A stretch of 63,772 nt of DNA, filler included, from Bigelowiella natans CCMP2755 (Eukaryota > Protista > Cercozoa), in the NCBI GenBank assembly GCA_000320545.1. It is 6 parts of 6 records of this genome, joined end to end, with 100 filler letters (N's around TTAATTAATTAA, not from the genome) between each part and the next. Parts side by side here need not be neighbours in the genome. Positions count along the whole stretch, not along the records: positions 36,640 to 53,005 come from ADNK01001305.1; 5 more parts are not named here. One strand, given 5' to 3'. Positions 25,147 through 53,105 of the stretch are shown in pieces. Position 1 is the first letter of the stretch. Each line of letters starts with the position of its first letter. The position numbers were made by a program, and so were the translations under genes. The notes below the pieces were generated by a model. That model was not told the origin of the DNA, made no database searches, and worked only from the letters and a program-made list of their open reading frames with translations.

Positions 25147-26724
25147 ATGATGCTGTACCTCGCGTTGATGATGAGGCTCACAATACTTCTTTCAACTCTC
25201 TACCTATCCGTTGCTACACCCTCCTTTTTTGGCATGGCATCGTCATCATTATCATCATCATCATCTCGGCTGTTTACAGGGAGACCGATCGGTCCCAAAC
25301 CACCATTGTTCACCGTAGCAGAGGGTGGTAGTGTGACACTACCACGAACCAGCAGGCTAGGGCGGAGAAGAAGAGCAGATATAAATCGACCCGCTGCTGC
25401 TATGATTGGTGGTTCTGTTCGAACGGCGAACAGTTTCTTAACACTGAGACGCAGCAGAAGTGAATCCCAGCAGCAGCAGCAGCAAACGATTGTTCCTCCT
25501 CCTCGTCATTTTCGTACTACTAGACTATTGTTCGTTTCCGCCTCTAATAATAATGATAGCCCTGCTCAATCAGCAACTGCACAGGAAGGGGATAAAAAAA
25601 CAACCGACGATAAAAACGACATGTCCGCCCCACTAACAAAGGAAAAGGCAGAGACGGCGAATCGTGAGACCTCTGACAAGCTAATTGATGTGTTCTTACA
25701 ACAAGAACAGGATGCGTGGAAGCACTTACTCGGGTTTTCCACACAATGGTGGGAGATGTCTGATGGAGTATTTGCTAGAATTGCAGAGAGAGCAAATCAG
25801 ACAGCCGACCCAAAGGAACAATTAGAACTTCTCCGTCTTGGACGTCAACTAAAAGAGACACATGATGAAGTATTCGAGAACCGTCGCGTTTGGAGGGAGC
25901 TTCGAAACCTCAAACCGGATGAACTTGAGTCTTACGTGTCTGCAAACATGGAAAGAATTGCAACGGATAGCTTCTTTGAGTACCTGAGAGATGTTGTTGG
26001 AAGGGCAGATCATATCGAAGATAATAGTGTTAGTGATCTTGAGCGCAGCCAAGTACGAGATCTTGCTAATAAACTCCTAGACCTTACTCAAGACTTGGCA
26101 ATAGGGGTAGACTCAGAGGTACGTAAGAATATGGAGAACATTCTTCGAGCGGGTTCCAAGGAGGATGCTAAGAAGGAGATCGATAAACTAGCAGAAAGTG
26201 GGGAGCTTGACCCAAGATATCTTGCCCTTATGTCCAAGGTTGTGCTATTATGAAGAAGAAGAAGAGGGAAAAGACCGTTACAGGCCTACTTTTTTAGAAT
26301 TATCATCATCAACCTAATAATTTTGATATGATCTCATCATTTGTTATATCAAGGCATATGCTGGGGGGAAAGACACCTGGTTTACAAAAGAAGATCATGA
26401 AGAAACGACGCTATACATGTATGAACAAATGCGTGTATCGATGCGCAAACAACAGCCTCTGGAAATTCGTCTCTTAAAGTATGATGTATTCATAGTAAGT
26501 AGTAGCAGCAGTTATATCAATGCTAATAAAAACATCATTTAAATTTGATTAATTTGATGTTCGGTTGCTGCCTTCTTTCACCTTTCACCTCCTCCTCCTC
26601 CTCCTCACAAACTTTATCAGCACTACTAACTACTACTACAAATTTCTATTTCTATTTCTACGTATCAGTGTTAACTGCATACGTAAGTGTTTGCCTCTCT
26701 CTTACGTGCAGAAAGCACTTAACT

Positions 26725-36639: not shown

Positions 36640-37049
36640 CCCCCCCCCCCCCCCACTACTACGCTGCTAATCCTGTCCTCGATGGAAGAGCCTCTGCCCC
36701 CTCTCCCCCCCCCTCCCCCGCTTCCAAAGTCTATCACAGTGCCACCTGAGGGGAGTGCGAGCAATCGTCAAACGGGTGAGATATACCATCATGATCTTCC
36801 AACCCCCTTCTCCTCGCCAAACCAAGAAACCTCGACTCCCACAACATAATGTGTACATGGTTGTTGTTGTTGTTGCTGCTGCTGCTGCTGCTACTACTAC
36901 TACTACTACTACAGCCTATTACCGGGGCCTCCCATCTGTACGACAACACGCCCGCCCTGTGGTGGTTGAGCATTAGCAATCAATCATCACTTCACATGTC
37001 AAAAGAGAACAACACAAAAAAGCAACCAACGTACGCCAAAATACGCCCT

Positions 37050-37087
<38 letters not shown>

Positions 37088-37658
37088 TCTCTCCCCCCCC
37101 TTCCCTCCCGCACTGCCTCCTCTTATCGAATACACCGAACATGAATGTAGCGCCTCCCACGCGCCCAACCGACACGTGGTTTGCTGGTGTATATCCCAGA
37201 CGGGCCGCCGTAGCGGTAAGAAACACGACGGCACACCATCCCGCTGGTACGATGAATACATGCCGTTTTATCTCTTATTATTATTTATTATAACCATACC
37301 CCTCCTCCTCCAAACATTGAGAATGGGTCCTGAGAAGCGCAACAAAGACCATGGTGATTGATTGATTGATTGATTGATTGGTTGGTTGATAATGGCACCA
37401 CGATGATCATGTATGATGACACACGAAGGAGAAGAGAAGGAAGAAGATGAGGAAGAAGAAGAAGAAGGAGAAGAAGAACTCTGGTAGCTATAATCCCGCG
37501 CACGGGGTCAACCTTTCCGCCAAAGAAAGAGTCGAAAATTCCTTGCGCGTCCTTATGTAGTTAAAGATGATTTCGTGTGGGAGAGGGGGTAGAGATATCA
37601 GGATGGGAAGACGGCACCATTTATAACCCCCCTCCCCCCCCCCACACCTAACACATTA

Positions 37659-37716
<58 letters not shown>

Positions 37717-38022
37717 TATGCAGATACATATAATTACAAGCACTCATGCACGCATATTTGAAACTCAATACGAACAGATTTACATTGAAGCTGAACTCCT
37801 GCCCCCCGCCTCCACCTCCCATCATTTCGGGGTCGAAGGAAAATCCTGGGCTGCTCTTGCCGTCCCAGCCGGGGGGGGCACCCATTTTATCGTTTTCTAT
37901 GCCCTGCTTGCCATAGTCGTCGTAAATCTTGCGCAACCTCTCGTCAGAGAGACAGTGATACGCCTCCCCGATCTTCTTGAACGATGCCGTTCTCCTGTGG
38001 AGTGTGTGCACAAGTGCGTGAG

Positions 38023-38111
<89 letters not shown>

Positions 38112-38935
38112 ACCGGTAGCATATGATGCCTACCTCTTCTTTTCCACGGGATCGAGTGTCTTATCGGGGTGCTCTTTGATAGCAAGCTGCGGCGGGTGAT
38201 TATGAAAAAGTGGTGGCAAAAAATGAGTCATCGGTGTTTGCCAATAGCTCTTCCGTAGCATCACGAGAGTCAGGTTCATGACGATTAAAAAGTGCACCAC
38301 CTTCCTGTACGCTTTCTTTACATCGTCTATTGTGGCCGACTTCTGGAGGCCCAATGTTTTGTAATACTCCATGTCGCATGCCCCACCTCGCAGCCTTACC
38401 ATCTTCGATTCAATGCGTTCAAGGGTGGGTGCGGACCCGCGACACTTTTGTTGTTGCGAAATCTGATGAAAATGCCGATCGTAGTGTTGGGAGGCGCTGC
38501 TGCTATTGGACCCACATCCAACTTCCTTCGCCACGCGTGAGCCTGAGCCATCAGTTATGGCGCAATGTGAAGGGGATTATTGGGAGCGAAGAAAGGGTAG
38601 CAGGCATGAGGGAAAACACTGTGTGTTTACCACATCAACCTACTGCTAACAGAATGAGACATTGAATGGCAGAAGACGCCACACGAAAACATCACTGTCT
38701 TCTCAACTCCTCTTCTTATGCTTCAAACCAGAACAAGAATCGAAAAACTTGTCATGGCTCTTCGGTTCGATGATGATCTATTGAAATGTATCATACCTCC
38801 CTGACCAACTATCGCAATGAGAATCGCTGACCACACTAGAAAGTGCACCAATCCCCCCCTCCAGCACAGGATACCATCCCGTCGGTGGAGATGGTGACGG
38901 TTGCCGCGAAGACAATCACCGATGTTCATTCGCAT
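36640..38935 (-). CDS. Class B DnaJ/Hsp40 (J-domain + G/F region) with an N-terminal signal-like and transit-like extension; 3' end lost at the gap
   Basis: EYYKTLGLQKSATIDDVKKAYRK/LAIKEHPDK.../FKKIGEAYHCLSDERLRKIYDDYG, then G/F-rich DAQGIFDSFFGG and DPFSMFGGGG. Leader exon 38935-38797 splices in frame to 38542. Confidence 0.9.
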
Positions 38936-40684
38936 CTTTACCCCTGCGAAGGATCTTGAATACGAATCATTATGATCTGCGTATGGATAAACGAATTGGT
39001 TCGTCAATGGTGCCGTGAATCAATGTTGTTCTACTAGTCTTCCATGAAAGCACGCTGAGCGTGTGCGTGCTCGAAGAGGCGAACCCTGTTTGACGCCATT
39101 GTACGTACGATAACATGTACCAAAAAATTCCAACTTATTATCATAATTGTAATCGTTTTCAATTTGAAAAGAAATCGGCATCTTTCTTCAGTGCCCTGGG
39201 ATGCACGAAAAACGAGATCGACATTCGCTAGAATCAACCCAGGAGCTACCATCGAGGGATTTCAAAAGGCAAACTTTCGGGGAAGTAAGCGGAATGATTC
39301 GATAGAAAAGCGTATAGGAAAAACAAAAGAGTGGGAAAATATCCCGTAATAGGCATTCGATGTTCGCGCATGGAGTTCGCTGATTGAGCTCGCACCGCAA
39401 GGCCAGAAGCCATTTACTCAAAAGACAGACCCGTAAATCCAACCGAATTTTGTCGCTTTCTTGGAAAAACATTATATTTTTATGTGCGTCAATCAAATAA
39501 TGTAGGCGTTTACCTTAACTTCGCGGACATTTGTAAACATTTGAAATTTCGCGGATTGCATGCTGCCAGAGGCCTCCGACCAACCGCTCGAATTCCCTGA
39601 GAATCCAGACTTTGTATCAAAATCTGTACACTTTCTATGTAAATTATCCCCTTGTTATCTCTTGTTAATCACCAAGTAATCCTGTCGTCCAAAATATTCA
39701 TAACTTTTCTATAAACAATATTGGTCACTCTAAAAAATATATGTATTCTGAATGTCTATAAGTATAGCTCTCATCTATATTCTTTGTCTACGTCTTGCAT
39801 ACTTTCCAGTCGTTTAATAAATTATTTGAAAAAATGGCAATTTTCTGACAATAAAGGATAAATGTAATAAACGACAACCATGAATGACAATTGACGAACA
39901 AGCTTTCTGTCGCGCCAAAGCCTTTGCTTTCAACGAAAAACTGATGTATGACGAATAATTATTTTAGAAAACTATTATTTGGTATATATCCCTGATTTCA
40001 ATCATAAATATAATTCGGTCTGCAACTCTATTATTCGGCACATCGTTGGCAGTTTTGTTGGGGGGACGAGGGAAGAATCAGTTTCTTGGCAAGGTTTTAC
40101 TCAATATGTACTAGATTTTTCACTATTCTAGACACATATGGCCGTATAAATGATTAAATCCCCCTTAAACGTATTACGTGCCATCCACTCAAACTTGAGC
40201 CAAAATTCAGATATTAATTATGCAAATAAGTAGCAAGAAGCTTTAACTAATTTCAAATATTTACAATATAATTTAGTGTATATAAAAAAATATCCTACAA
40301 TCTGTTTACACTTACAGTGTTTTTAATAATAAAACGATCTGAATCTGAAATTAAGATTTATTTAACTCTATTGGTTAATAAATTTTATTGTTAAATTTGA
40401 GAATAGATTGTTAAAATGTTATAATTATAATGTAAATCTCATTAATGACCTTTATTCAAGCGAATATCTGCGGATGTTTCAAAATATATAAGTTTTAATA
40501 AAGGATATTTGAATTTCAGTTTATTTTTCCTTTTCTGTGATAAATGTAACTCAATTTTTTTTGGGTTTTTATGGCTCTATTTTGAGGGTTTTCCATGTCG
40601 CTGTGACAGAATGGATAAAAAAAAATGAACACCGTTATTTCCATCACGGTCGCGTTGATTCTGACATGACGAAAATCAGGGTGA

Positions 40685-42121
<1,437 letters not shown>

Positions 42122-43219
42122 ATGCTCTGAGAATTTAAACGCTTGTGTGTCATTTTGCCTTATTTTTAGCGTCATAAGCCTAAAACCGTCAAATATTCGA
42201 ACATGGCAATTTTGCCACTTCAATATGTCATTCGCTTTGTGCATTTGCTATAATCGCTCTAGCGCTTCTCATGGCATCCATAAATGTAAACCCGAGCACA
42301 ATAGCTGACATGCGCTTAAATTGTACTCCAGCTCATTTGCTCACGTAGTGCTAGCTAGAGTGTGAGAATCTACTCACCCACCGTCGAATACTTAGCTTCG
42401 GTGCTGAAAAGATGTCGAAAAGATTTTTCTGCTACAGCCAGCATGGGAGGATGACATGCAACTGCAACAATTGAAAACAAATTCCAGCACGCCACAGCTA
42501 GCTAGCTAGGCACGTGGTGCACACTGCACAGCTCCGTCAAACCCCGCTAGCCCGGCTAGCCGGCAACGACGGGTTTGTGAACAGTGCAGCGCTTTGAAGC
42601 AGCAGTTGCAGTTGGTCGATCAAAGAAAAATCATCAGATAGAACTTGTCCGATGGCCAAACTAGCAAACCTCAAAAAATGACCGAAACGTTGGACCCGCA
42701 TCTGGAAATGTCCATTGTTTTCAAGGCCTCGATCAGTGAGCGCGCAAAGTGTGAAAATGCCACACCCGTCTAGCCGTTGTGCAGAGGATGCACGCTGCGC
42801 GTTTGTTCTCTGCCACATTTTGAATGCTTTTGCGCGTGTGTTTGACCAATCTTCATGTGCACGAAAAATTTCAAAGAAATGCGAGCAAATCCAATGTCCA
42901 TGACATCACATGACGCGCTTGGTCGCGCGCAAAAGCTTCCAAATGCATGTTCTGGCGATTCGTTACAGGTTTGACGGAGCTGTGGTAGACATGCATGCTG
43001 CACCACATGCGTGTGCGACTGATCACACATGTTCATTGTTGTCGTCCACTCATCTATGATTATTAGGAGACGTACACACCAGCTGCACAATAATGATACT
43101 AATAATGCAGTGATCACTAGGTAAATGATAAAGTTATTTTCGATAGTAAGAATCGACAAGCTTCACTAAAAGCTTCAAGTTAATTAAATATCCACGTCGC
43201 GTGTTAAATACACACAAAT

Positions 43220-43233
43220 ACACACACACACAC

Positions 43234-43300
<67 letters not shown>
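43220..43300. repeat. Compound microsatellite palindrome (CA)n-TG-(TA)n-CA-(TG)n
   Basis: The sequence is self-complementary around the central (TA)n. Confidence 0.9.
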
Positions 43301-43302
<2 letters not shown>

Positions 43303-44215
43303 ATATAAACTTAATATAAACTAACGTGTGTGCTTTATAAGTTAAAATAATAATTAGAACATATGATGACCAATAATAATAACAATAGTAATAATGTGAC
43401 TTATGTCTCTATCGTAAAACACATCTTATCCAGTGTGTATTCTTTTTAAATCTAGACCGGCTTATTAAGCTGGTCAAGCTACTATTACGCCGGACGAGCA
43501 GTTTGAGATGACGCAATCAACTTCAGAAGCGCCCACATCACAGGATTGGACTCCGACAACAAACACCACTCTCATGTTGCATACATGAGTGAAGCAAGAG
43601 ATATAATACGACGGTACAAATAACGCGAAAGTCAAAATATTTTTGTTACAGAACACACTAAATGAAAGCACCGATGCTTACGCTGGCGATAACGAGAAAA
43701 TGTGAACTTAAGTTCGTTCGTTATTTGGCTGCAAAACCCAACTATAGAAGACGCAGTTAATTCAGAATGATAACGATGACGGAGACGAAAAGATAATGAC
43801 CGATTGGGAATGTTTATGTGTGATGATAGTAGTAGAAGTGGTGCTGTTCTTTAACTATACGTTTTGGCTGGTGATGGAAAGTGAAGGCAGTAAGATGTGA
43901 TGACATGGGTATCGTTGTCTAAATCAATAAGAGAGCGCTAGCGAATAGGAACAGGTGGGAAGAATAAATAGGTCGCAGGAGCTCAGGAACGGGCTGATGG
44001 CTTGCACTGCCTCACACACCAACCAACCATGCGCAACAGCACCCAGTCCAAAGGAGAGTGAAGATTGAAGATAGATAGATAGATAGAGAGAGAGAGCGAG
44101 AGAGAGGAGGATATAAATCCAAGGTGCGATGTTTTGAATAATGGCCTGTTGGCAGCAAATGTGCTTACATCTCCATTCGACCATTCATCTATCCCCTCCC
44201 CTCCTCTCCCCCCTC

Positions 44216-44904
44216 CTAGTTGTCATCTCTAGGGCTACTGCTGCCAGTAGGTTCTCCTCCAGACACAGCGATGCACTTGAATGGAGCTCCGCTTCGGAAG
44301 TCAAAAGCGGCATAAACGTCATGGATGTCATCGGTCGTTAACGCCTGCACCACCTCAGAAAAGCTGTGAAAGAAGAAGAAGAAGAAGAAGAAGAAGAAGA
44401 AGAACACGACGAAGAAGAAGTCACGAAGCAAAATCAATCGGACGTCGCGTCGTAGGAGGGAGTAGGGCGGTACGGTTGATGGGTGCACGCTCATGATAGA
44501 AGCACACTAGTAAGCCAACGACAAAGAGAGGGGGAGAACACTCTTCATTACCATGGAAGTGCGACGATATGAATGGCACAGGGAGGGGGAACAACTACAA
44601 TCACCACGCCGCTACTCCGTGCTGCTGCTGCTACTACTACTACCATTACTACACTTACTCTGTTACGATGCGGAGATCCTTCTTTGGTATATCGTCTGCT
44701 TGGACACCGGCAAGCAGCTCTAGCCAGTAGTGATTACTCGAAAGTGAGTTTTCATGCTGGCGATGATGAGGGAGGGGTCCACATATGAGTGGGTTGTCGA
44801 TTAATGCAACAAATTAGAGAAGTTGTGCAAATAAAAGCAGCAGCAAATGATACACGACAAAGCACCAGATAGTAGCAGCGGGTGAGCTATGCTCGGGATA
44901 GGAT

Positions 44905-44944
<40 letters not shown>

Positions 44945-46444
44945 TATATTATAATATGCACTAATATTTATAACACCCGCTACCTGCGCAACCACGAACC
45001 GCTTTGCATCTTCCAGCTAACAATCGAGAACAAATGACACCAATCAATGTATCAATCAATCCACCCACAACAGCGACTGACTACCAACCAACGAGAGGAG
45101 AGACAAGATCAAAAGCCTCTTTTGCTGCGCGCATATCATGGAAATTGCTCGTCCATAACCATCATAGTCAGCTGGCAGCATGCACGGTGACCACTGTGAT
45201 TAGACCTGGCTACTCGTCGCGCGAAACCTCCTCAAAACCCCCTCACAGGCGTCCACAGCTCGCTCCACGTTCTGACCATTGTGGTGGTATACGTGACAAA
45301 ATGATAGTGAGAGGATGGAAGGGGCCGGGGGGGGGAGGGGGGGAAAGGGGAGCGAACAAGAACGGAAAAAAAAAGAGAATGAAGGCGTAACCACAAAATG
45401 ATCTAATTAGCGGTGGGATTTGCGAGTGTTGTTATCATCATCACCTCCGGCCTTGAGTGAACGAACACAATCCATTCGTTGTTTGTCCCACTTCTCTCAG
45501 CCTGGCCAATCTCGAGCTTTACGTGATACGTCAGCGATAACGTGTCTCTCACAATGATGAATAGCTCATTATTCAGCATACGCTCCAACACCGCAATGGC
45601 GCCATAAACGTACCTGACATCAAAGGCGATGAGGAGATATGGATTAGCAGGAGATTTTGGGTTAGGTTAGTTTTATTTGTTGTTTTGCCCGGACATACCG
45701 AGCGTTTTTGCGCTATTTCGACGAAATCATGGCAACAAGACGCACGCACGCACGCACGCACACGATTTTTTGTTTCCCCTCCCTTCTTTCAGAACTTCTC
45801 CCTACCTCCCTCCCTCCCTCTCTTTTTCTTCTTCTTCTTCGGCTCTTAAATAGTAGTTGGATAATACAGGGGATGTGCTCTGCGAGCTGGCGGCAATGGC
45901 GACGAATCCGTAGATGACAAGGCTGTTCGTCGTGTATATCCATCATTCTCCTCCTCCTTCTCTGCACCGCTGGCCACAGGATGGTGGAAAGGGCTGCTGA
46001 CGGAGGACGACGAGACTAACGATGGAGAAGAACCATCCTGCTTATTACGCCTGGAAGCTTCCTCCGGTGTAGATACGGCGATGCCCGTGGAATTGAAGGC
46101 GTCGTCTCTGTCCTCCCTTTTCCTTGCCTTCTCCCTCCGCCTCCTCCAGCTGCTGCTGCTGCTGCTACTTTCAGCCACCGAAGAGCTGGTCCTCTGCGCA
46201 CCTCCCTCCTCCTCCTCCTCCTCCTCCTCCTCCTCCTCCTCTCGAGCTATTGTCCTCTCCCTTCTCCGTTGCAGAGCGTCACCAAAGGCCCCGCCGAGCC
46301 ACACGCCCGTTTCGCTATCGAAGGGCTCTTGGAAGTGGTGAGGGGGGGAGGCATCATCATCGTGATCCCTCTTGGCGCTCATACCCCACCGGTTGGGAGC
46401 AAAACCACCGATATACCTAGTGTATTTGCCTTTATTTCTCTCTC

Positions 46445-46481
<37 letters not shown>

Positions 46482-46991
46482 TCTTGGCTCGTGTTTTTGT
46501 CTTTTTGTTCCGCGAGGGAAGAATGGAGAGGGGGAAGGGGGGGAAGGGGGGGAGGGAATAGAGGAGCTTCCTCATTGAAAATTACAACATCAACTACTAC
46601 AATTATCAATTATCACCCGATGGCTCTCCGCTGTGAGTCTGGTAATTCGACTCGCTGCTCGCGTCGGCGGTCATCAGGAATGAGGAGGTGGTTGCGAAGA
46701 GGGTGGTGGTGGTGAGGAGGAGGAGGATGGTGATGATCATGGCCACCATGGCCACTTGGTGATGACGAAGAAGGGACGGCTATCGATGATGACGACGACG
46801 ACGATGATGATGATGACGATAGCGGCACTGATGGCGGAATTGTCCCGAGGTAGGTGAAGAGAAGCGCCTCCATTCCCTGCATATTGAAGTCGCCAACGAC
46901 TACTATCTGCATTCATCATCGGTTTTATATGAGAAAACACACGGCTTCAAGATTGCCATGCTGCAGCTGCTTATTTTAACAAATCACCCGA

Positions 46992-47044
<53 letters not shown>

Positions 47045-48182
47045 CTATTCCGACAACAACCTCTAAGTTTTCTGGGCTCATCTGTCCCGTAATGGCGGTC
47101 TTCACGTCGTTGAGGCTAAGAGCGTCGATCTTCTCGCCCGGCGGATCGCAAAACCTTTGATTTGATGAAGGGTCGTGTACGAATGATGATGATGGTGATG
47201 ATGATGGTTGGTGATGATACTGGTATGTAATCGTTGCACCTATCATTCAAATAGCTAACTCCAATAAATTATCATCACGGATTGGCGAATCGCAAGGAGG
47301 GGATATTGGCTTGAGTCATACCTGGGGTCATCTGACGTGAGAGCACGTAGCAGTAGGTCCAAAGGCGCCAACTCGAGAGACGTTTTCGCACGCTGGCAGT
47401 GCGTATGCATCATCAGCTTGACATTCTCTAAGTCCTCCTCGGCCACATCCAAGTCCGTTAGCATCAGTCGTAGCAGCTGGACGGCACTTAACGCGCTGCT
47501 TGAAGGTGACCCGACCTACCATTCGTCGTCGGTTTCGGCGTAAAGTAGTAGAGTTGTTGTTGTTGTTGTTATTGTTGTTGTTGTTGTTGTTGTTGTTGTT
47601 ACTGTGTGTTTGGGTTATACATCGCACGCGACGGCATGCCCACAAATTTTTAACAAAATACACACACACCACGCACACGCACGCACTCATATATGCATAT
47701 TCTGCAGGTAGGCAACGGTCGTTTTCGTTGTCGCAGCAACCAGCATTTCGTCTCACTTGCGTATAAAATGGGCATCATCACCATCACCATCATCATCACC
47801 ATCACCATCATCATCACCATCACCATCATCACACGTGCACATTTGTTGTTGCTGCTGTCGCCGCCGACTTGTACCTCCCACCAAATCGTCTCCGGATTCA
47901 CTCCGAGCGTGACGTTTAGCAAGTTTTTGATGCAGAAAAGATCGATGTCCCCCCTCGTCCAGCCTGCTGCCGAGCCGCCCTGCATCACAACGTTGACTCC
48001 TGCTCTCACAGCCCCCGGCTGAGGGTGATGATGATGATGACGACGGAAAGTTTGGGGGGGGGAGGAGAAGGGAGATGGGGGTTACAGCGAAATCACTAGA
48101 GGCACATAGAAATAATTGTAATACTATCATAAAACCCACAACTCTCTCTTTCTCTTCCTCTCTCCTCCCCCCCCCCCCCCCC

Positions 48183-48216
<34 letters not shown>

Positions 48217-48538
48217 ATGTGTGTCTTCCCCCCCCCTCCCAATTTTTGTCCACATTTCTATCCGTGCGACTATACTGCAAAACATATGTATAATTCATAT
48301 ATATAGCCCATGACCACGGCTCCTTCTCCTGCCCCCCCTCCCCCCTCGTAGGAGAGGCCTCCAGCAGCAGATGCACGTATGAGAAAGTGATGGGCGATGT
48401 TCCCTGTGTTGTTCTTGAGAGAGATACGAATGCCGTTGCTCAGCCGCCGATGCACCACTTGTGTGGTTTCATCTTCATATCGTAGTAAAGAAGACGATGA
48501 GCTCCTATTCTGACCATCACCAGGTCGTCGAGGAGACA

Positions 48539-48569
<31 letters not shown>

Positions 48570-49460
48570 GAAGGAGGAGGGTGAAGATTTATCATCATCA
48601 ACAGCAGCAGCAGCATAATCGTCGTTGCCGTTTATGGGAATCCATCTCGGCTCATGCCTGCAAAGGATGATGGCTATCAGTCCCTTTTCACGACAACACG
48701 ATATATTCTAGCATTTCCCCATCTTCTTGAAATCTCGCATCATTACTACCACCACCAACATCATCATAGTCGTCATTGTCATCATGATAAGGAATATGCG
48801 TACGTCTTCGTCCATTGCAGCACCGTCGAGGGGGGTATAAGACGATGGCGACCTACCAAGAAACACAAATCAAGGATGGTGGCGTTGGGGGGGATCAAGA
48901 AGACGAAGATGATCTAGAGGAGGAAGATGATGATGATAGAAGAGATGGGTACGCGTATGTGGGTGTGTATGCACGCAGGTGTGCGTATGCGTATGCGTGT
49001 GTGCGTGTGATAAATCTTCATCGCATCGTGTGTGGTATATACCTGTCCCCTCTGCGCCATCCTCGTCATTATTCTTACTACGACTGCTCAGCTCCCCTCC
49101 CCCCCTCCTCCTTTCCTCCAACCGTTGCTGCCGTTTGGCCATCAGCAACCCCTCACCCGTCTCCTGGTCGCCTACTTGCTGCCTTTCTCTCTCGAAGTAG
49201 AAAGAGGGGGGAGGGGACTCAGGCCCTGCACGCAGTAGCGCGTCTACATGTGCCTCCACCGATATGCGTGCCCCCCCCCCGCCCCCACGGCCATTCTCTC
49301 TCTCCGTCGTCTCCCTCTCGAGACTCTCGGTTTTCGAGTTTATCTGGAGGTTCGGCGGCGTGCAGAGAAGTGCCGCTGATGTGCGTGGAGCATCCTGCAG
49401 TCCATACCGTGCTATGTACTCGAGCATTAGCCTCACTTCTGTGTTGATCTGATATATTAT

Positions 49461-49492
<32 letters not shown>

Positions 49493-49932
49493 CACACACA
49501 AACACATTGCAAATATAAATACACACTTCCAAAGGATACCGTAAGAGGCAACAGTAAGTAACCGCAAATACGTGTATATTAATATTTCACATCAACAAGA
49601 CCAAATAAACTCGGGTCTGACTTCCTTTCTTGTGACCTTGCTCTCCTCCTCCTCCTCCTCCCCCCTCCACACATGATGCGTACTGCTACTACTATTGCTG
49701 CTACTACCTGCTCTTTAGTGATCATCGGGGCGATGTTTAGGGCTAAGATAGAGTAATCCTTGTTTGACATGAAGGCATGCCCAAGAAGGTCAGCGTCCAT
49801 GAGAGCCTGAACAACATCTCCGGAGGGCACATCATCGCTTTGATCTCCAGCCTGTTGTTGAAACAGAATTCGGCGCATTTTCGTTCGCAACGCTACTCCA
49901 AAAAAAGAAAAAGGCCAGATGCTCGCTCATCG

Positions 49933-49970
<38 letters not shown>

Positions 49971-50450
49971 AAAAAATCATCCGAAGCTCTCTCGCCTCCT
50001 CTTTATTTGTGTCGCGAAGTCTTTTTGATTGTCTTCCTTCGATCCCCATCGCAACTACGCTATCGTCCATCAATACAGAAGCAACGAAGAGAAAAGGGGG
50101 GGGGGGGGGGGGGGGGGACGACGACCCAAAAAGGCTGATAGCTGCAAAGACCTCTCTCCGGTAGAATTGCAAGAGCAGCATGAGAGCCATCATCACTAGC
50201 ACATCGAGCGATAGTGAATCGATCGACGGGGTTTAAATAATACCTGTTTAGCATCGGCAACGAATGCGTCTTTCAAGCTGAGGAACTCGTCCTGTGAGAG
50301 GCCATGCTCGTACATCAGCCTAATCTCCTGCAAAGCTTCCTGAAGATCCTCCTCCCACTTCGCTATTCCGCAGTGAATCTACATATGAGCAAAATCAGCA
50401 TCGGTCTCTCTCTCCCTCTCTCAATGTAGTGTTTGTGTCTGTGGAATAAT

Positions 50451-50489
<39 letters not shown>

Positions 50490-51565
50490 GCACGTGTCGC
50501 GGTTGATGGGGGGAGGGGAGTGCCGTTACTCATGATGTAACTATCATCATCATCCTCATCACCACCACCACCGCCATTCGAATCACCAACCGATATGCGG
50601 CAGGAGCAATACCTTCACAGTCGTGACTTGGCAGCCTTCGCTCGCTGAGTCTGAGTGGTCAAACTCAATGCCTCCAAATGGCGCGGTGCTCTTGCAGCGC
50701 GAGCTGAGGCGATGAGCAATGGCCGACGCCTGATATGGTGGAAAAGGAGCGACGCGTTGGTGTTGTCGTTGTGATTACTGCGAGAAAACATTTTCTCTAA
50801 TTATAATCATTATCTCTCTTGCTATCATTACTACTACTACTGCTGCTGCTGCTGCTAACCGTACTAAATACCCCGATTCTCGTGGCGATGAAGTCCTTGA
50901 GGTCCTTGACCGTTTGGAGTGCAGATGGGGGGTTTTTCGCTCCCAATATGAGCTGCAGCTGCTGTGAGAGCAAGCTGTGCTCAAACAGCGAAACGGTGGA
51001 TGGGGAAGAAGAAGAAGAAGAAGAAGAAGAAGAAGAAGAAGAAGAAGAAGGAGGAGGAGGAGAACGGCCCCCCTTCCTCCTGCTCGCACTGGTGTTCGCT
51101 ACTACGGTGGGAGTGGTAGAGATGCTATCGAATTTGTAAGTCGCATTCTCCTCCTCCTCCTCCTCCTCTCCCTCCTCCTCCTCCTCGTATCCTGCGCGGG
51201 GGGCTCCATAGCTGTCTCTGCTCCATCGGTGAGCAACCCTTTGAGTGTCGGCCTCGTCATTTAGAGACTCCATGCCGGAGGGGGGGGGGGAGGAGGAGGA
51301 GGATGGCACGGGTCTCTCCTTCAAACCCTCATCGCCTTGGATAGGGAGGGCTTTACGCTTCCCCCCCTCCATGTGCGGTCGCTCTGGTTGCTCCATGGCT
51401 GTCTCAGTCGCTATCGTAGTCGTCGTCTTGTTCTCACCAGGGGGAGGGGGGGAGGGGGGGCTCGAAGGGGAAGGTTGCTTTTGCATCTTGAGGGAGGGCG
51501 GTGATAGTGAGATCTGAATCATCTTCATTATTGGCGAAGCTGAGGAAAATGATGGCGGTGATGGA

Positions 51566-51601
<36 letters not shown>

Positions 51602-52697
51602 TAATCATCAGGCTGGTAAACGGGGGTCTTGGAAATGCTCCCTTCATCCGCCAGCTTCTCTGCTCTACCCCCCTCTTCCCCGCCGCTACTCTCCACCCAG
51701 TCGCCGCGTCGTGCTCCAGTATCTTTGCCTCCCCTTTGCTGGCTTACCCCGCCATTATTACCATCGTCGCCTTTGTTGCTATTGAAGAGAAGTGAATTGC
51801 TGCTTTGCACACTGAGCTGTATCTGGTTGTTCAAACGGATTAGACCATCCCCCCCTGGAGGGACATCGTCGAGGGAACTAACTCTACTGCCCTGGTCGCC
51901 TCCCTCCCCCTCTTCCTCCTCCTTGTCTTTGATGCTATCGGCATCCCCCCCCCGGTCGCTGTTATTCTTATCGCCACGACGACGCAGCAGCAGGGGGGTG
52001 AGCTGCTTGAGCGACTTTATGCGTGAAAGTGAGGAGCCTATGTCGCCAAGACGCTGCGCTAATTTGTCAAAATCGCCGGCTCCACGACCGCGCTGGGGGG
52101 GGACGGATTCGAAGACGCGACGAATGCTCTCCTCAGCCTCTGCAGCATCCAAGTCTCCCACCTGCCCACCGTTAAGCATTAGAAAAATAGTGTAAGAACC
52201 GAAGAGGAGGTGGGTTGATGGGGGGGGCAGACGGGCAGAGGGAAAAGCTAATATCTATCTCTCTCACACAAACACACACGCTTCGCCTTCCAACCAGCTT
52301 AGATCAGCGAAAGACCGACGATAAATTTGCGCGTGTGTGGTGTTCTACGCTCTCCGTGTGCGAGCGACGAGGTGAGGTGGGGTGGGTGCGATCGTGGATG
52401 GCGGTGGTGAGGGCCTCACGATGAAGAGGTCCGCCCTTCCAGGATGATAAAAGCGATTGTAGAAGCTTCGGACCGAGGACGCAGGGGTGGTAGAGATCAC
52501 GGCCTCCGAACCGATAGGCAATCTAAGGAGTGTAGAGGGAATTGTTCAAGAGTTTGTATCAACCAGCAAACAGGCAACGATTTGCGTGGCAGCAGCAGCA
52601 GCTACCAGCAGCCATACCTGTTCGGAAGAATGGTCTCTTTGTGTAGTTCCCCGATCTCCTTGGTGGTGATGCGGTACTCAAGCGTCGACATCATACT
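44216..52697 (-). CDS. SPP: Stromal processing peptidase (M16 metallopeptidase), multi-exon; N-terminal HxxEH region lost at the gap
   Basis: MMSTLEYRITKEIGELHKETILPN/RLPIGSE..VRSFYNRFYHPG, EHSLLSQ..QTVKDLKDFIATRI, PFGGIEFDHSDSASEGCQVTTV, RRLSNGIRI, LNNELFIIVRDTLSLTY, VERAVDACEGVL and LTTDDIHDVY..KCIAVSG align in order with plant SPP motifs. Confidence 0.9.
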
Positions 52698-53105
52698 TAA
52701 GGGGGGGGGGGGGGGGAACGGGGGAAAAAATCAGAACCAAAGAAAAAGTTATAAATCATTGGATAAAATCCTAACCCAAGAAATGGCGACCCACCTGTCT
52801 TTTAATTAGTTATTAATACCTTTAGCCCCCCCCCTTTCCAAATACCCCACTAAATTAATACGCTATGTCCACATCTCTCTCTCTGGCTCTCTCTCGTCCC
52901 CCCTCCCACCAATTTTGAAACCAGGGAAATTTACCGCCAGGGGGCCAAAACATATGCCTCGATTTATAAAGGGGACTACCAACTCCTCATAACCCGGCGT
53001 CGCAGNNNNNNNNNNNNNNNNNNNNNNNNNNNNNNNNNNNNNNNNNNNNTTAATTAATTAANNNNNNNNNNNNNNNNNNNNNNNNNNNNNNNNNNNNNNN
53101 NNNNN

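What the first reader, a model, noticed from the sequence alone, without database searches (positions are those of the whole stretch)
38370..38935. Cytosolic-type DnaJ with a signal peptide and a leader ending in the ubiquitin C-terminal mimic RLRGG: candidate DUB-cleaved periplastid targeting system
Seen: splicing exon 38935-38797 to 38542 gives a hydrophobic stretch (LVHFLVWSAILIAIVGQG), about 45 polar residues, then MV-RLRGG (38396-38382) three residues before MEYYKTLG, where a normal class B DnaJ starts. Known: ubiquitin ends in LRLRGG and deubiquitinases cut after GG; complex plastids retain a relict eukaryotic cytosol (periplastid compartment) with its own Hsp70. Inference: this cytosolic-type co-chaperone is imported into that compartment and its leader is removed by a ubiquitin-specific protease rather than SPP. 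The stroma-type leader at 25147 has no such motif, which suggests the motif marks a compartment. I cannot confirm whether this motif has already been described in this lineage.
Basis: partly seen in the sequence, partly recalled or inferred. Interest (0 to 1): 0.8.

Follow-up and report, generated by a model that had tools for sequence, protein, structure and literature searches.

The report
Conserved ubiquitin-tail motif in DnaJ leader
A Bigelowiella natans chaperone-helper (DnaJ) gene carries an unannotated targeting leader ending in the ubiquitin-like motif RLRGG just before the J domain; LRGG is kept in the only two known relatives, so it is not chance, but cutting by a ubiquitin protease is untested.

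Summary
On the minus strand, ATG 38935 opens a basic stretch and a 16-aa hydrophobic segment. A GT..AG intron (38796-38543) joins it in frame to about 47 polar residues. Then come MV-RLRGG (38396-38382), ACD, and the J domain (MEYYKTLG, ATG 38372).

The genome is Bigelowiella natans, a chlorarachniophyte with a nucleomorph-bearing periplastid compartment. The public model (JGI Bigna1 135149, Augustus) starts at ATG 38402 and misses the leader.

Only two close relatives exist among about 15 billion proteins:
- One, a 2-kb transcript, has the same build: a 28-aa basic region, a 17-aa hydrophobic segment, 117 S/T/R-rich residues, then RLRGG 8 residues before the J domain. Its only usable ATGs lie upstream of the leader.
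- The other, 5'-truncated, has FLRGG 5 residues before the J domain.

LRGG is invariant, with synonymous codon differences, between unalignable flanks. None of 189 other J proteins checked has it. Cytosolic paralogues have neither leader nor motif.

So the leader and the motif are real and under selection. Periplastid targeting is a reasonable inference. Cleavage by a deubiquitinase is unproven: no ubiquitin fold precedes the tail, chlorarachniophytes lack the SELMA ubiquitin import machinery, and an M16-type site is a rival. RNA-seq could not be run.

The parts
38797..38935 (-). Candidate exon A. It holds the start codon (A at -3), a basic n-region of about 28 aa and a 16-aa hydrophobic segment (a signal peptide or signal anchor).
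   Evidence: The Kyte-Doolittle (KD) hydropathy maximum is 2.85 at residues 33-43. The L005 orthologue has the same layout. Codon-position GC is 0.63/0.43/0.57, like the tubulin gene at 0.62/0.41/0.58. There is no RNA evidence in B. natans.
38543..38796 (-). Predicted intron 1 (254 nt), with GT at 38796-38795 and AG at 38544-38543.
   Evidence: The donor is GAG|GTATGA. The acceptor is the first AG after a pyrimidine tract. It is one of 53 frame-keeping combinations, so it is inferred, not shown.
38403..38542 (-). Polar part of the leader, like a transit peptide (first part of exon B). It has about 47 residues, 9 of them Ser, and a net charge of about +4.
   Evidence: No Pfam or PDB similarity was found.
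38400..38402 (-). In-frame ATG where the public gene model (JGI Bigna1 135149) starts. It is also a possible internal start for a short, leaderless isoform.
38382..38396 (-). The RLRGG motif (agg ctg cga ggt ggg), which matches the ubiquitin C-terminal tail.
   Evidence: LRGG is invariant in all three subfamily members with synonymous codon differences. The flank is predicted disordered, with pLDDT below 50 for residues 1-8 of the model.
38301..38372 (-). Start of the J domain (MEYYKTLG...AYRK), the last part of exon B.
   Evidence: Pfam DnaJ match to profile positions 1-23. Identical to P0016.
38134..38186 (-). Exon C, carrying the HPD motif of the J domain.
37784..37994 (-). Exon D, carrying J-domain helices III and IV and the start of the G/F-rich region.
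   Evidence: 100% identical to P0016.
37513..37551 (-). Exon E, carrying the DAQGIFDSFFGGK motif (a DIF-type helix of the G/F region).
   Evidence: The model shows a helix at residues 122-132.
37300..37329 (-). Exon F (DPFSMFGGGG). The public model wrongly reads on into the following intron and stops there.
36923..36956 (-). Exon G (GGRVVVQMGGPG), which is missing from the public model.
   Evidence: It aligns to both orthologues.
36640..36745 (-). Exon H, Gly-rich and cut off by the edge of the piece. The C-terminal half of the gene lies outside the piece.

Best explanation
This is the 5' half of a Bigelowiella natans nuclear gene for a leader-bearing paralogue of a cytosolic J protein. The mature protein has a J domain and a G/F-rich region. 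In the orthologues it also has three SH3/KOW-like beta-barrels in place of the usual DnaJ C-terminal domain.

The protein is made with an N-terminal extension of about 100 aa:
- a basic stretch,
- a 16-17-aa hydrophobic segment that takes it into the endomembrane system,
- a Ser/Thr/Arg-rich, positively charged, acid-poor stretch like a transit peptide.

By the usual logic for this alga (signal peptide plus transit-peptide-like region on a cytosol-type protein), it is most likely delivered to the periplastid compartment. There it would serve the nucleomorph-encoded cytosol-type Hsp70.

The extension ends in (R)LRGG, 3 to 8 residues before helix I of the J domain, in a disordered linker. This motif is under purifying selection. 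It is most simply read as the recognition or cleavage site that separates the leader from the mature co-chaperone. Which protease acts there is not known.

Shown: the sequence, its conservation and the translated leader in an orthologue. Inferred: the B. natans splice, the destination and any cleavage.
For: - Organism and faulty model: P0016 is EukProt Bigelowiella natans, JGI Bigna1 135149 aug1.28_g9857. It starts at ATG 38402 and ends inside an intron.
- Orthologue transcript L005: its first two ATGs (219, 291) are in frame with the J domain, there is no in-frame stop, and there is no Met near the J-domain start. Leader GC3 is 0.71 against 0.77 in the J and G/F region.
- Same build in both species: the hydrophobic segment lies at residues 29-45 (B. 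natans) and 28-45 (L005). The transit-peptide-like parts have net charge +4 and +12, and L005 has 40 Ser/Thr and 2 acidic residues out of 117.
- LRGG is invariant in 3 of 3 members, with codons ctg cga ggt ggg, ctc cgt ggc ggc and ttg cga ggt ggt. The flanks are unalignable and of different lengths.
- None of 189 other J proteins has LRGG within 25 aa before the J domain.
- Leaderless paralogues start M..(S/D)DYYKVLG.
- The three leader-type proteins form a clade (ultrafast bootstrap, UFboot, 95).
- The linker is predicted disordered.
- Literature: a nucleomorph-encoded cytosol-type Hsp70 is predicted to be in the periplastid compartment, and signal-peptide-plus-transit-peptide proteins of cytosolic type are the accepted predictor for that compartment (PMC3542566).
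Against: - There is no RNA evidence for the exon A-B splice in B. natans, and 53 alternative frame-keeping splices exist.
- The n-region of about 28 aa is long for a signal peptide, so the segment may be a signal anchor. No SignalP-type tool was available.
- The two N-termini are not significantly similar in sequence (permutation p 0.07-0.19).
- An open frame of that length arises in 9% of shuffles of the GC-rich L005 5' region.
- There are only three sequences, and one is 5'-truncated.
- Nothing here tells the periplastid compartment from the stroma or the ER lumen.
- B. natans and L006 both have a Met just before LRGG, so a short cytosolic isoform is possible.
Confidence: 0.6

Rival explanations
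1. After import, the leader is removed by a ubiquitin- or UBL-tail-specific protease (of UCH, USP or ULP type) that cuts after the GG of (R)LRGG. The motif would then act as a ubiquitin-tail mimic.
For: - Two of three members carry the full RLRGG, and the third carries FLRGG.
- The site lies in a disordered linker right before the mature domain.
- The residue after GG is A, G or K, never Pro.
- B. natans has a nuclear gene for a ubiquitin monomer with a signal peptide and transit peptide (PMC3542566).
- It also has an unusual wealth of N-terminal ubiquitin fusions that must be cut after GG, including truncated ubiquitin moieties (PMC6332867).
- From my own knowledge, short LRGG peptides are weak but real substrates of some deubiquitinases and good substrates of viral papain-like proteases.
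Against: - No ubiquitin fold precedes the tail, and most cellular deubiquitinases need that fold.
- Periplastid derlin and ubiquitin import components are reported absent in chlorarachniophytes (PMC5756292).
- The UCH-like protein seen in plastid and nucleomorph proteomics has no leader (PMC3542566).
- There is a single protein family and no cleavage data.
- No paper links LRGG to targeting in this lineage.
Confidence: 0.2
2. An ordinary processing or sorting element. The conserved Arg followed by small residues would be an M16-type site (R at -2 or -3, as for mitochondrial and stromal processing peptidases), or a site for another peptidase. Alternatively, it could be a functional N-terminal flank of the mature J protein. 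The protein may then go to the stroma or the ER lumen rather than the periplastid compartment, and the likeness to ubiquitin would be coincidental.
For: - The leader composition fits any chlorarachniophyte transit-peptide-like region.
- R-x-x or R-x before the cut is the known preference of M16 processing peptidases (my own knowledge).
- Signal-peptide-bearing J proteins in the ER are common, as in P0021, P0024 and P0251.
- Four residues are a small motif.
Against: - M16 sites are loose, so strict conservation of L-R-G-G in all three members, with RLRGG in two, is more than such sites usually show.
- The orthologues have no HDEL or KDEL ending.
- The plastid stroma uses a DnaK-type Hsp70, and this J protein's paralogues are cytosolic.
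Confidence: 0.25
3. A relic of a gene fusion. The leader would have been borrowed from a leader-bearing ubiquitin gene or from an N-terminal ubiquitin fusion. Only the last residues of ubiquitin survive.
For: B. natans has 22 ubiquitin-fusion genes, some with partial N-terminal ubiquitin, and a ubiquitin monomer of 190 aa with N- and/or C-terminal extensions (PMC6332867; PMC3542566).
Against: - A relic without function would not stay invariant while the synonymous sites and both flanks diverged.
- No residual ubiquitin similarity was found.
- The origin and the present function are separate questions.
Confidence: 0.1
4. There is no leader in B. natans. The upstream frame would be 5' UTR, the protein would start at ATG 38402 or 38372 as in the public model, and RLRGG would be a chance string or the N-terminus of a cytosolic protein.
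For: - The public Augustus model starts at 38402.
- Both internal ATGs have good context.
- The leader part of exon B shows no clear codon periodicity.
- No B. natans transcript was seen.
Against: - The L005 transcript cannot make a J protein without translating its leader.
- The motif is conserved at the peptide level.
- The public model is demonstrably wrong at its 3' end.
Confidence: 0.1

Closest known systems
Signal-peptide-plus-transit-peptide-like (bipartite) leaders of nucleus-encoded plastid and periplastid proteins in chlorarachniophytes (Hirakawa 2009, 2010; Curtis 2012; Hopkins 2012, PMC3542566)
   Same: An N-terminal hydrophobic segment is followed by a Ser/Thr-rich, positively charged, acid-poor stretch, placed on a protein whose paralogues are cytosolic.
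   Different: The n-region before the hydrophobic segment is long and basic. The leader ends in a strictly conserved ubiquitin-tail-like LRGG, which my searches did not find described for these leaders.
Ubiquitin, NEDD8 and ISG15 C-terminal tails, and the N-terminal ubiquitin fusion proteins of B. natans (Archibald, Teh and Keeling 2003; Sibbald 2019, PMC6332867)
   Same: (R)LRGG lies directly upstream of a separate mature protein. B. natans routinely makes proteins that are released by cleavage after this tail.
   Different: No beta-grasp ubiquitin domain precedes the tail. The preceding sequence is low-complexity and unalignable between species. DnaJ is not among the listed fusion partners.
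J proteins of the diatom periplastid compartment (sDTC, sDPC) and the SELMA-associated deubiquitinase ptDUP (Moog 2011, PMC3101018; Hempel 2010)
   Same: These are leader-bearing Hsp70 co-chaperones in a relict cytosol, with a deubiquitinase acting on imported proteins.
   Different: The domain partners differ (TPR and PDI there). The plastid is of the red lineage and has SELMA, which chlorarachniophytes lack (PMC5756292). ptDUP is proposed to remove conjugated ubiquitin, not to cut a linear leader.
Class B J proteins (Sis1 and DNAJB1 type)
   Same: An N-terminal J domain with HPD, then a G/F-rich region with a DIF-type helix, and no zinc finger.
   Different: The orthologues have no DnaJ_C domain (PF01556). 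They carry three tandem SH3/KOW-like beta-barrels instead.

Membership tests
J-domain protein (Hsp40), class B-like | J domain with an HPD motif | tested here: met
   Pfam DnaJ matches exon B and the orthologues at E 2e-22. HPDK lies in exon C. The model shows the J-domain helices with pLDDT of about 90.
J-domain protein (Hsp40), class B-like | G/F-rich region after the J domain, with no CxxCxGxG zinc finger | tested here: met
   Exons D to H are Gly/Phe/Met-rich. The full-length orthologue P0020 has no zinc-finger Pfam hit.
J-domain protein (Hsp40), class B-like | Canonical DnaJ C-terminal substrate-binding domains (PF01556) | tested here: not met
   The orthologues hit only PF00226. Their C-terminus folds as three SH3/KOW-like barrels. 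The B. natans C-terminus lies outside the piece.
Chlorarachniophyte bipartite (signal peptide plus transit-peptide-like) leader | N-terminal ER signal peptide | tested here: inconclusive
   A hydrophobic segment of 16-17 aa is present in B. natans and L005. It follows a basic stretch of about 28 aa, so it could be a signal anchor. No signal-peptide predictor was available.
Chlorarachniophyte bipartite (signal peptide plus transit-peptide-like) leader | Transit-peptide-like region that is Ser/Thr-rich, net positive and poor in acidic residues | tested here: met
   B. natans has 49 aa, net +4, with 9 Ser. L005 has 117 aa, net +12, with 40 Ser/Thr and 2 acidic residues.
Chlorarachniophyte bipartite (signal peptide plus transit-peptide-like) leader | Leader is transcribed and translated with the mature protein | tested here: inconclusive
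   This is met in orthologue transcript L005. In B. natans it rests on a predicted splice, because RNA-seq was not obtainable.
Chlorarachniophyte bipartite (signal peptide plus transit-peptide-like) leader | Localisation in the periplastid compartment or plastid | not testable with these tools
   This needs GFP fusions (for example in Amorphochlora) or immunolocalisation.
Ubiquitin-like modifier or ubiquitin fusion processed after GG | C-terminal LRGG tail directly before the released protein | tested here: met
   VRLRGG, GRLRGG and MFLRGG lie 3, 8 and 5 residues before the conserved J-domain start (M/T)EYY.
Ubiquitin-like modifier or ubiquitin fusion processed after GG | Beta-grasp ubiquitin fold upstream of the tail | tested here: not met
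   The leaders give no ubiquitin-family hit in Pfam at E up to 10. PDB sequence searches also find no ubiquitin.
Ubiquitin-like modifier or ubiquitin fusion processed after GG | Cleavage after GG by a deubiquitinase or ULP present in the same compartment | not testable with these tools
   This needs N-terminomics, mutants and a proteome scan for leader-bearing proteases. The literature reports only a leaderless UCH-like protein (PMC3542566).
SELMA ubiquitin-dependent periplastid import (with ptDUP) | Symbiont-specific Der1, Cdc48 and ubiquitin machinery at the second outermost membrane | not tested
   This machinery is reported absent from chlorarachniophytes (PMC5756292, citing Hirakawa 2012), so this system is not the frame for the motif.

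The most novel reading that the evidence does not exclude
Chlorarachniophytes, whose periplastid import and maturation machinery is unknown and lacks SELMA, may use a bare ubiquitin-tail mimic, (R)LRGG, at the end of a bipartite leader as the maturation or sorting signal for at least some periplastid-compartment proteins. A leader-bearing deubiquitinase- or ULP-type protease would cut it. The signal may have arisen from this lineage's habit of making N-terminal ubiquitin fusions.
Probability: 0.2. Interest if true: 0.85.

Novelty: new variant of a known kind. Interest (0 to 1): 0.55.

Why it matters
How proteins are sorted to, and matured in, the periplastid compartment of chlorarachniophytes is an open question. 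The translocon of the second membrane is unknown, and the ubiquitin-based SELMA system of red-lineage algae is missing. The peptidase that trims periplastid leaders has not, to my knowledge, been identified.

A four-residue motif that is identical to the ubiquitin tail and conserved at a leader/mature junction gives a concrete handle. It can be mutated in the transformable Amorphochlora, searched for across predicted periplastid proteomes, and used as bait for the protease.

Even if the ubiquitin likeness is coincidental, three results stand:
- The public gene model is corrected.
- A likely J-protein partner for the nucleomorph-encoded Hsp70 is identified.
- An uncharacterised J-protein architecture is described (J domain, G/F region and three SH3-like barrels).

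Tried and rejected
- Orthologue hunting:
  - A metagenome scan with exon D found nothing.
  - A second scan with the three-sequence alignment returned only generic DnaJ genes.
  - Word-index searches with P0020, P0016 and the alignment found no further leader-type members.
  - The subfamily therefore stays at three sequences.
- Ubiquitin remnant: Pfam at E up to 10 and PDB sequence searches of both leaders gave no ubiquitin hit. A weak hit to the deubiquitinase ZUFSP (whole-sequence E 0.014, domain E 1.6) is judged to be chance.
- N-terminal homology between B. natans exon A and L005: not significant.
- Codon periodicity in the exon B leader: uninformative.
- My first reading (5' UTR plus a chance motif) was dropped.
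- I compared the motif by eye with PEXEL (RxLxE/Q/D) and oomycete RxLR patterns, and the spacing does not fit.
- Papers by Hirakawa (2009, 2010, 2012) on chlorarachniophyte targeting are not held. What I say about them is second-hand or from memory.
Exons were searched by reference, and the spliced downstream part was taken from the database protein P0016. The only joining was a local frame check.

Full report
WHAT IS IN THE SEQUENCE

The finding lies on the minus strand of a piece that runs from 36640 to 53005.

Reading down from ATG 38935 gives a peptide that starts MRMNIG. It continues with a basic stretch of about 28 residues and then the hydrophobic run LVHFLVWSAILIAIVG.

After base 38797 there is a donor, GAG|GTATGA. 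The first AG after a pyrimidine tract lies at 38544-38543. Joining 38797 to 38542 keeps the frame, because exon A is 139 nt (phase 1).

The frame continues through a split-codon Gly and 46 polar residues. Then come M-V-R-L-R-G-G (RLRGG = 38396-38382), A-C-D, and MEYYKTLG, whose ATG is at 38372.

Downstream, the gene continues through the following exons, after which the piece ends:
- C, 38186-38134 (HPD motif)
- D, 37994-37784
- E, 37551-37513
- F, 37329-37300
- G, 36956-36923
- H, 36745 to the edge of the piece

Two cautions apply.
- 53 different GT..AG pairs would keep the frame from ATG 38935.
- In the unspliced frame a stop lies 61 codons above MEYY, and there is an in-frame ATG at 38402. 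A leaderless protein starting MVRLRGG is therefore also possible.

WHOSE GENOME, AND WHAT THE ANNOTATION SAYS

A full HMMER search with exon D alone (by reference) found a 148-aa database protein, P0016, that is 100% identical.

P0016 is EukProt EP00466 Bigelowiella natans, JGI Bigna1 135149, model aug1.28_g9857. The organism is therefore the chlorarachniophyte B. natans. It has a four-membrane plastid of green-algal origin, with a nucleomorph in the periplastid compartment.

The public model is an ab initio Augustus call. It starts at ATG 38402 and splices exons B to F as I do. It then reads into the intron after exon F and stops (GGGGVWL*), so it misses exons G and H and everything beyond. 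The model is wrong at its 3' end, and it is no evidence about the 5' end.

The neighbouring intronless alpha-tubulin (40760-42121, plus strand) is also in EukProt. It has 91-93% DNA-identical copies in marine metatranscriptomes.

THE DECISIVE COMPARISON

The same search found only two close relatives among 1.84 billion cluster representatives: P0017 (61% identical) and P0020 (62% identical).

P0017 sits on a 2013-nt transcript contig, L005.
- The frame of its J domain is open all the way up.
- The first two ATGs of the transcript (219 and 291) are both in that frame.
- There is no Met near the start of the J domain.
- The J protein of that organism therefore has to be translated from upstream of a 170-residue extension.
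  - a basic region of about 28 aa;
  - a 17-aa hydrophobic segment at residues 28-45 (29-45 in B. natans);
  - 117 residues with 40 Ser/Thr, 14 Arg/Lys and only 2 acidic residues;
  - then I-G-R-L-R-G-G, 8 residues before TEYYDIL.

P0020 sits on L006, which is cut at its 5' end. It reads ...KWMFLRGGKAGETEYYELLGV.

In the three sequences L-R-G-G is invariant, while the codons differ at synonymous sites:

| Sequence | LRGG codons |
|---|---|
| B. natans | ctg cga ggt ggg |
| L005 | ctc cgt ggc ggc |
| L006 | ttg cga ggt ggt |

The spacer to the J domain is 3, 8 and 5 residues long and differs in sequence. Everything upstream is unalignable. This is the signature of selection on the peptide, and it also shows that this stretch is coding.

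Further comparisons point the same way.
L005's open reading frame, which is not stored as a protein, has it as well.
- Leaderless paralogues start M..(S/D)DYYKVLG with no leader and no LRGG. They come from Hondaea, Polarella, the chlorarachniophyte Norrisiella and many unnamed transcriptomes.
- The three leader-type sequences group together in a tree (ultrafast bootstrap, UFboot, 95; SH-aLRT 53).
- An AlphaFold model of the N-terminal 145 residues puts MVRLRGGA in a disordered flank (pLDDT below 50) directly before a confident J domain.

WHAT THE MATURE PROTEIN IS

It has a J domain with HPD and a G/F/M-rich region with a DIF-type helix.

The orthologues have no DnaJ_C domain. They carry three tandem modules of about 60 aa that Pfam does not recognise. 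These fold with high confidence (mean pLDDT 86) into small beta-barrels. The barrels match the KOW repeats of Spt5, the SH3-like tandem of Kin17 and Tudor domains.

This architecture is widespread in stramenopiles, alveolates and rhizarians as a leaderless, hence presumably cytosolic, protein. "Cytosolic-type" is therefore fair. "Normal class B" holds only for the N-terminal half.

HOW IT MOST LIKELY WORKS

Shown:
- a translated N-terminal extension in an orthologue;
- the same layout, by prediction, in B. natans;
- a conserved LRGG at the extension/J-domain junction, in a disordered linker.

Inferred:
- The hydrophobic segment acts as a signal peptide or signal anchor.
- The Ser/Thr/Arg-rich part acts as a transit-peptide-like region.
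- In B. natans the accepted predictor for periplastid proteins is exactly this pairing on a protein of cytosolic type.
- A cytosol-type Hsp70 encoded by the nucleomorph is predicted to reside there and would need a J partner (PMC3542566).

I therefore put periplastid targeting at a little over one half, with the ER lumen and the stroma as alternatives.

The conserved motif is most simply a recognition or cleavage site that frees the J protein from its leader.

THE DEUBIQUITINASE IDEA

For:
- Two of the three members carry RLRGG in full.
- The residue after GG is never Pro.
- B. natans has a leader-bearing ubiquitin monomer gene (PMC3542566).
- It has 22 ubiquitin-fusion genes, some with only a partial N-terminal ubiquitin. 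The cell is therefore used to cutting after this tail (PMC6332867).

Against:
- Nothing like a ubiquitin fold precedes the tail, and most cellular deubiquitinases rely on that fold.
- The ubiquitin-dependent SELMA import system and its deubiquitinase ptDUP belong to red-lineage plastids (PMC3101018, PMC12412216). They are reported absent from chlorarachniophytes (PMC5756292).
- The only UCH-like protein seen in plastid and nucleomorph proteomics lacks a leader (PMC3542566).
- An M16-type processing site (Arg at -2 or -3 followed by small residues) is a sober rival.
- One protein family cannot show that the motif marks a compartment.

I found no paper that links LRGG or RLRGG to targeting in this lineage.

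LIMITS

- No signal-peptide predictor was available.
- The open frame in the GC-rich L005 leader alone is weak evidence, since 9% of shuffles stay open. The argument rests on the positions of the ATGs and on the conserved peptide.
Only a local frame check joined them.

VERDICT

A leader-bearing, cytosolic-type co-chaperone that is probably bound for the periplastid compartment is well grounded. Ubiquitin-protease cleavage is an attractive but untested sub-hypothesis, at about 0.2.
- It is a new variant of a known kind of targeting leader.
- It comes with a clear set of experiments that could turn it into a handle on periplastid protein maturation.

Noticed in passing
window 36640-38402 (minus strand): The public gene model JGI Bigna1 135149 (148 aa) is truncated. 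After exon F (37329-37300) it reads into the intron and stops. It misses exons G and H and the whole C-terminal half, and its start at 38402 omits the leader.
   Followed up: yes
P0020 residues 228-424; L005 1292-1891; alignment A2: The C-terminal half of this J-protein family is three tandem modules of about 60 aa with no Pfam match. They fold (mean pLDDT 86) as SH3/KOW/Tudor-like beta-barrels. The best PDB matches are Spt5 KOW repeats, the Kin17 SH3-like tandem and Mind bomb REP. The architecture is widespread and leaderless in stramenopiles, alveolates and rhizarians, and seems uncharacterised.
   Followed up: partly
window 40760-42121 (plus strand): An intronless alpha-tubulin gene of 453 aa ending in EEF is transcribed divergently from the DnaJ gene, across an AT-rich spacer (29% GC around 39640-40640). 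The identical protein is encoded by four marine metatranscriptome contigs that are only 91-93% identical at the DNA level.
   Followed up: partly
window about 45400-52521 (minus strand): A long multi-exon gene has fragments typical of an M16 (pitrilysin or stromal-processing-peptidase-like) metallopeptidase, such as VVGDF..YLGT at 46613-46912 and FYNRFYHPGRADLFIV at 52345-52521. Very long Ser-, Glu- and His-rich low-complexity inserts interrupt it. Only a weak Pfam Peptidase_M16_C hit was obtained (E 0.02). Its 5' end runs off the piece.
   Followed up: partly
window 37053-37093, 37355-37390, 37425-37478, 37679-37719, 38025-38110: The introns of the DnaJ gene are packed with microsatellites: (CT)20, (TGAT)9, (GAA)18, (AT)21 and (TC)18 followed by (TG)25. 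Long G runs occur in the Gly-rich exons.
   Followed up: no
L005 1196-1406: In the orthologue transcript, the J and G/F frame and the frame of the C-terminal barrels overlap out of register. This suggests a retained short intron or an assembly indel. The metatranscriptome gene caller split the transcript into several calls and started the J protein at a GTG just after LRGG.
   Followed up: no
window 38400-38402 and L006 56-58: Both B. natans and L006 have an in-frame ATG two to three codons before LRGG (MVRLRGG and MFLRGG), in good initiation context. L005 has Ile there. A second, leaderless isoform from an internal start is possible in some species.
   Followed up: no
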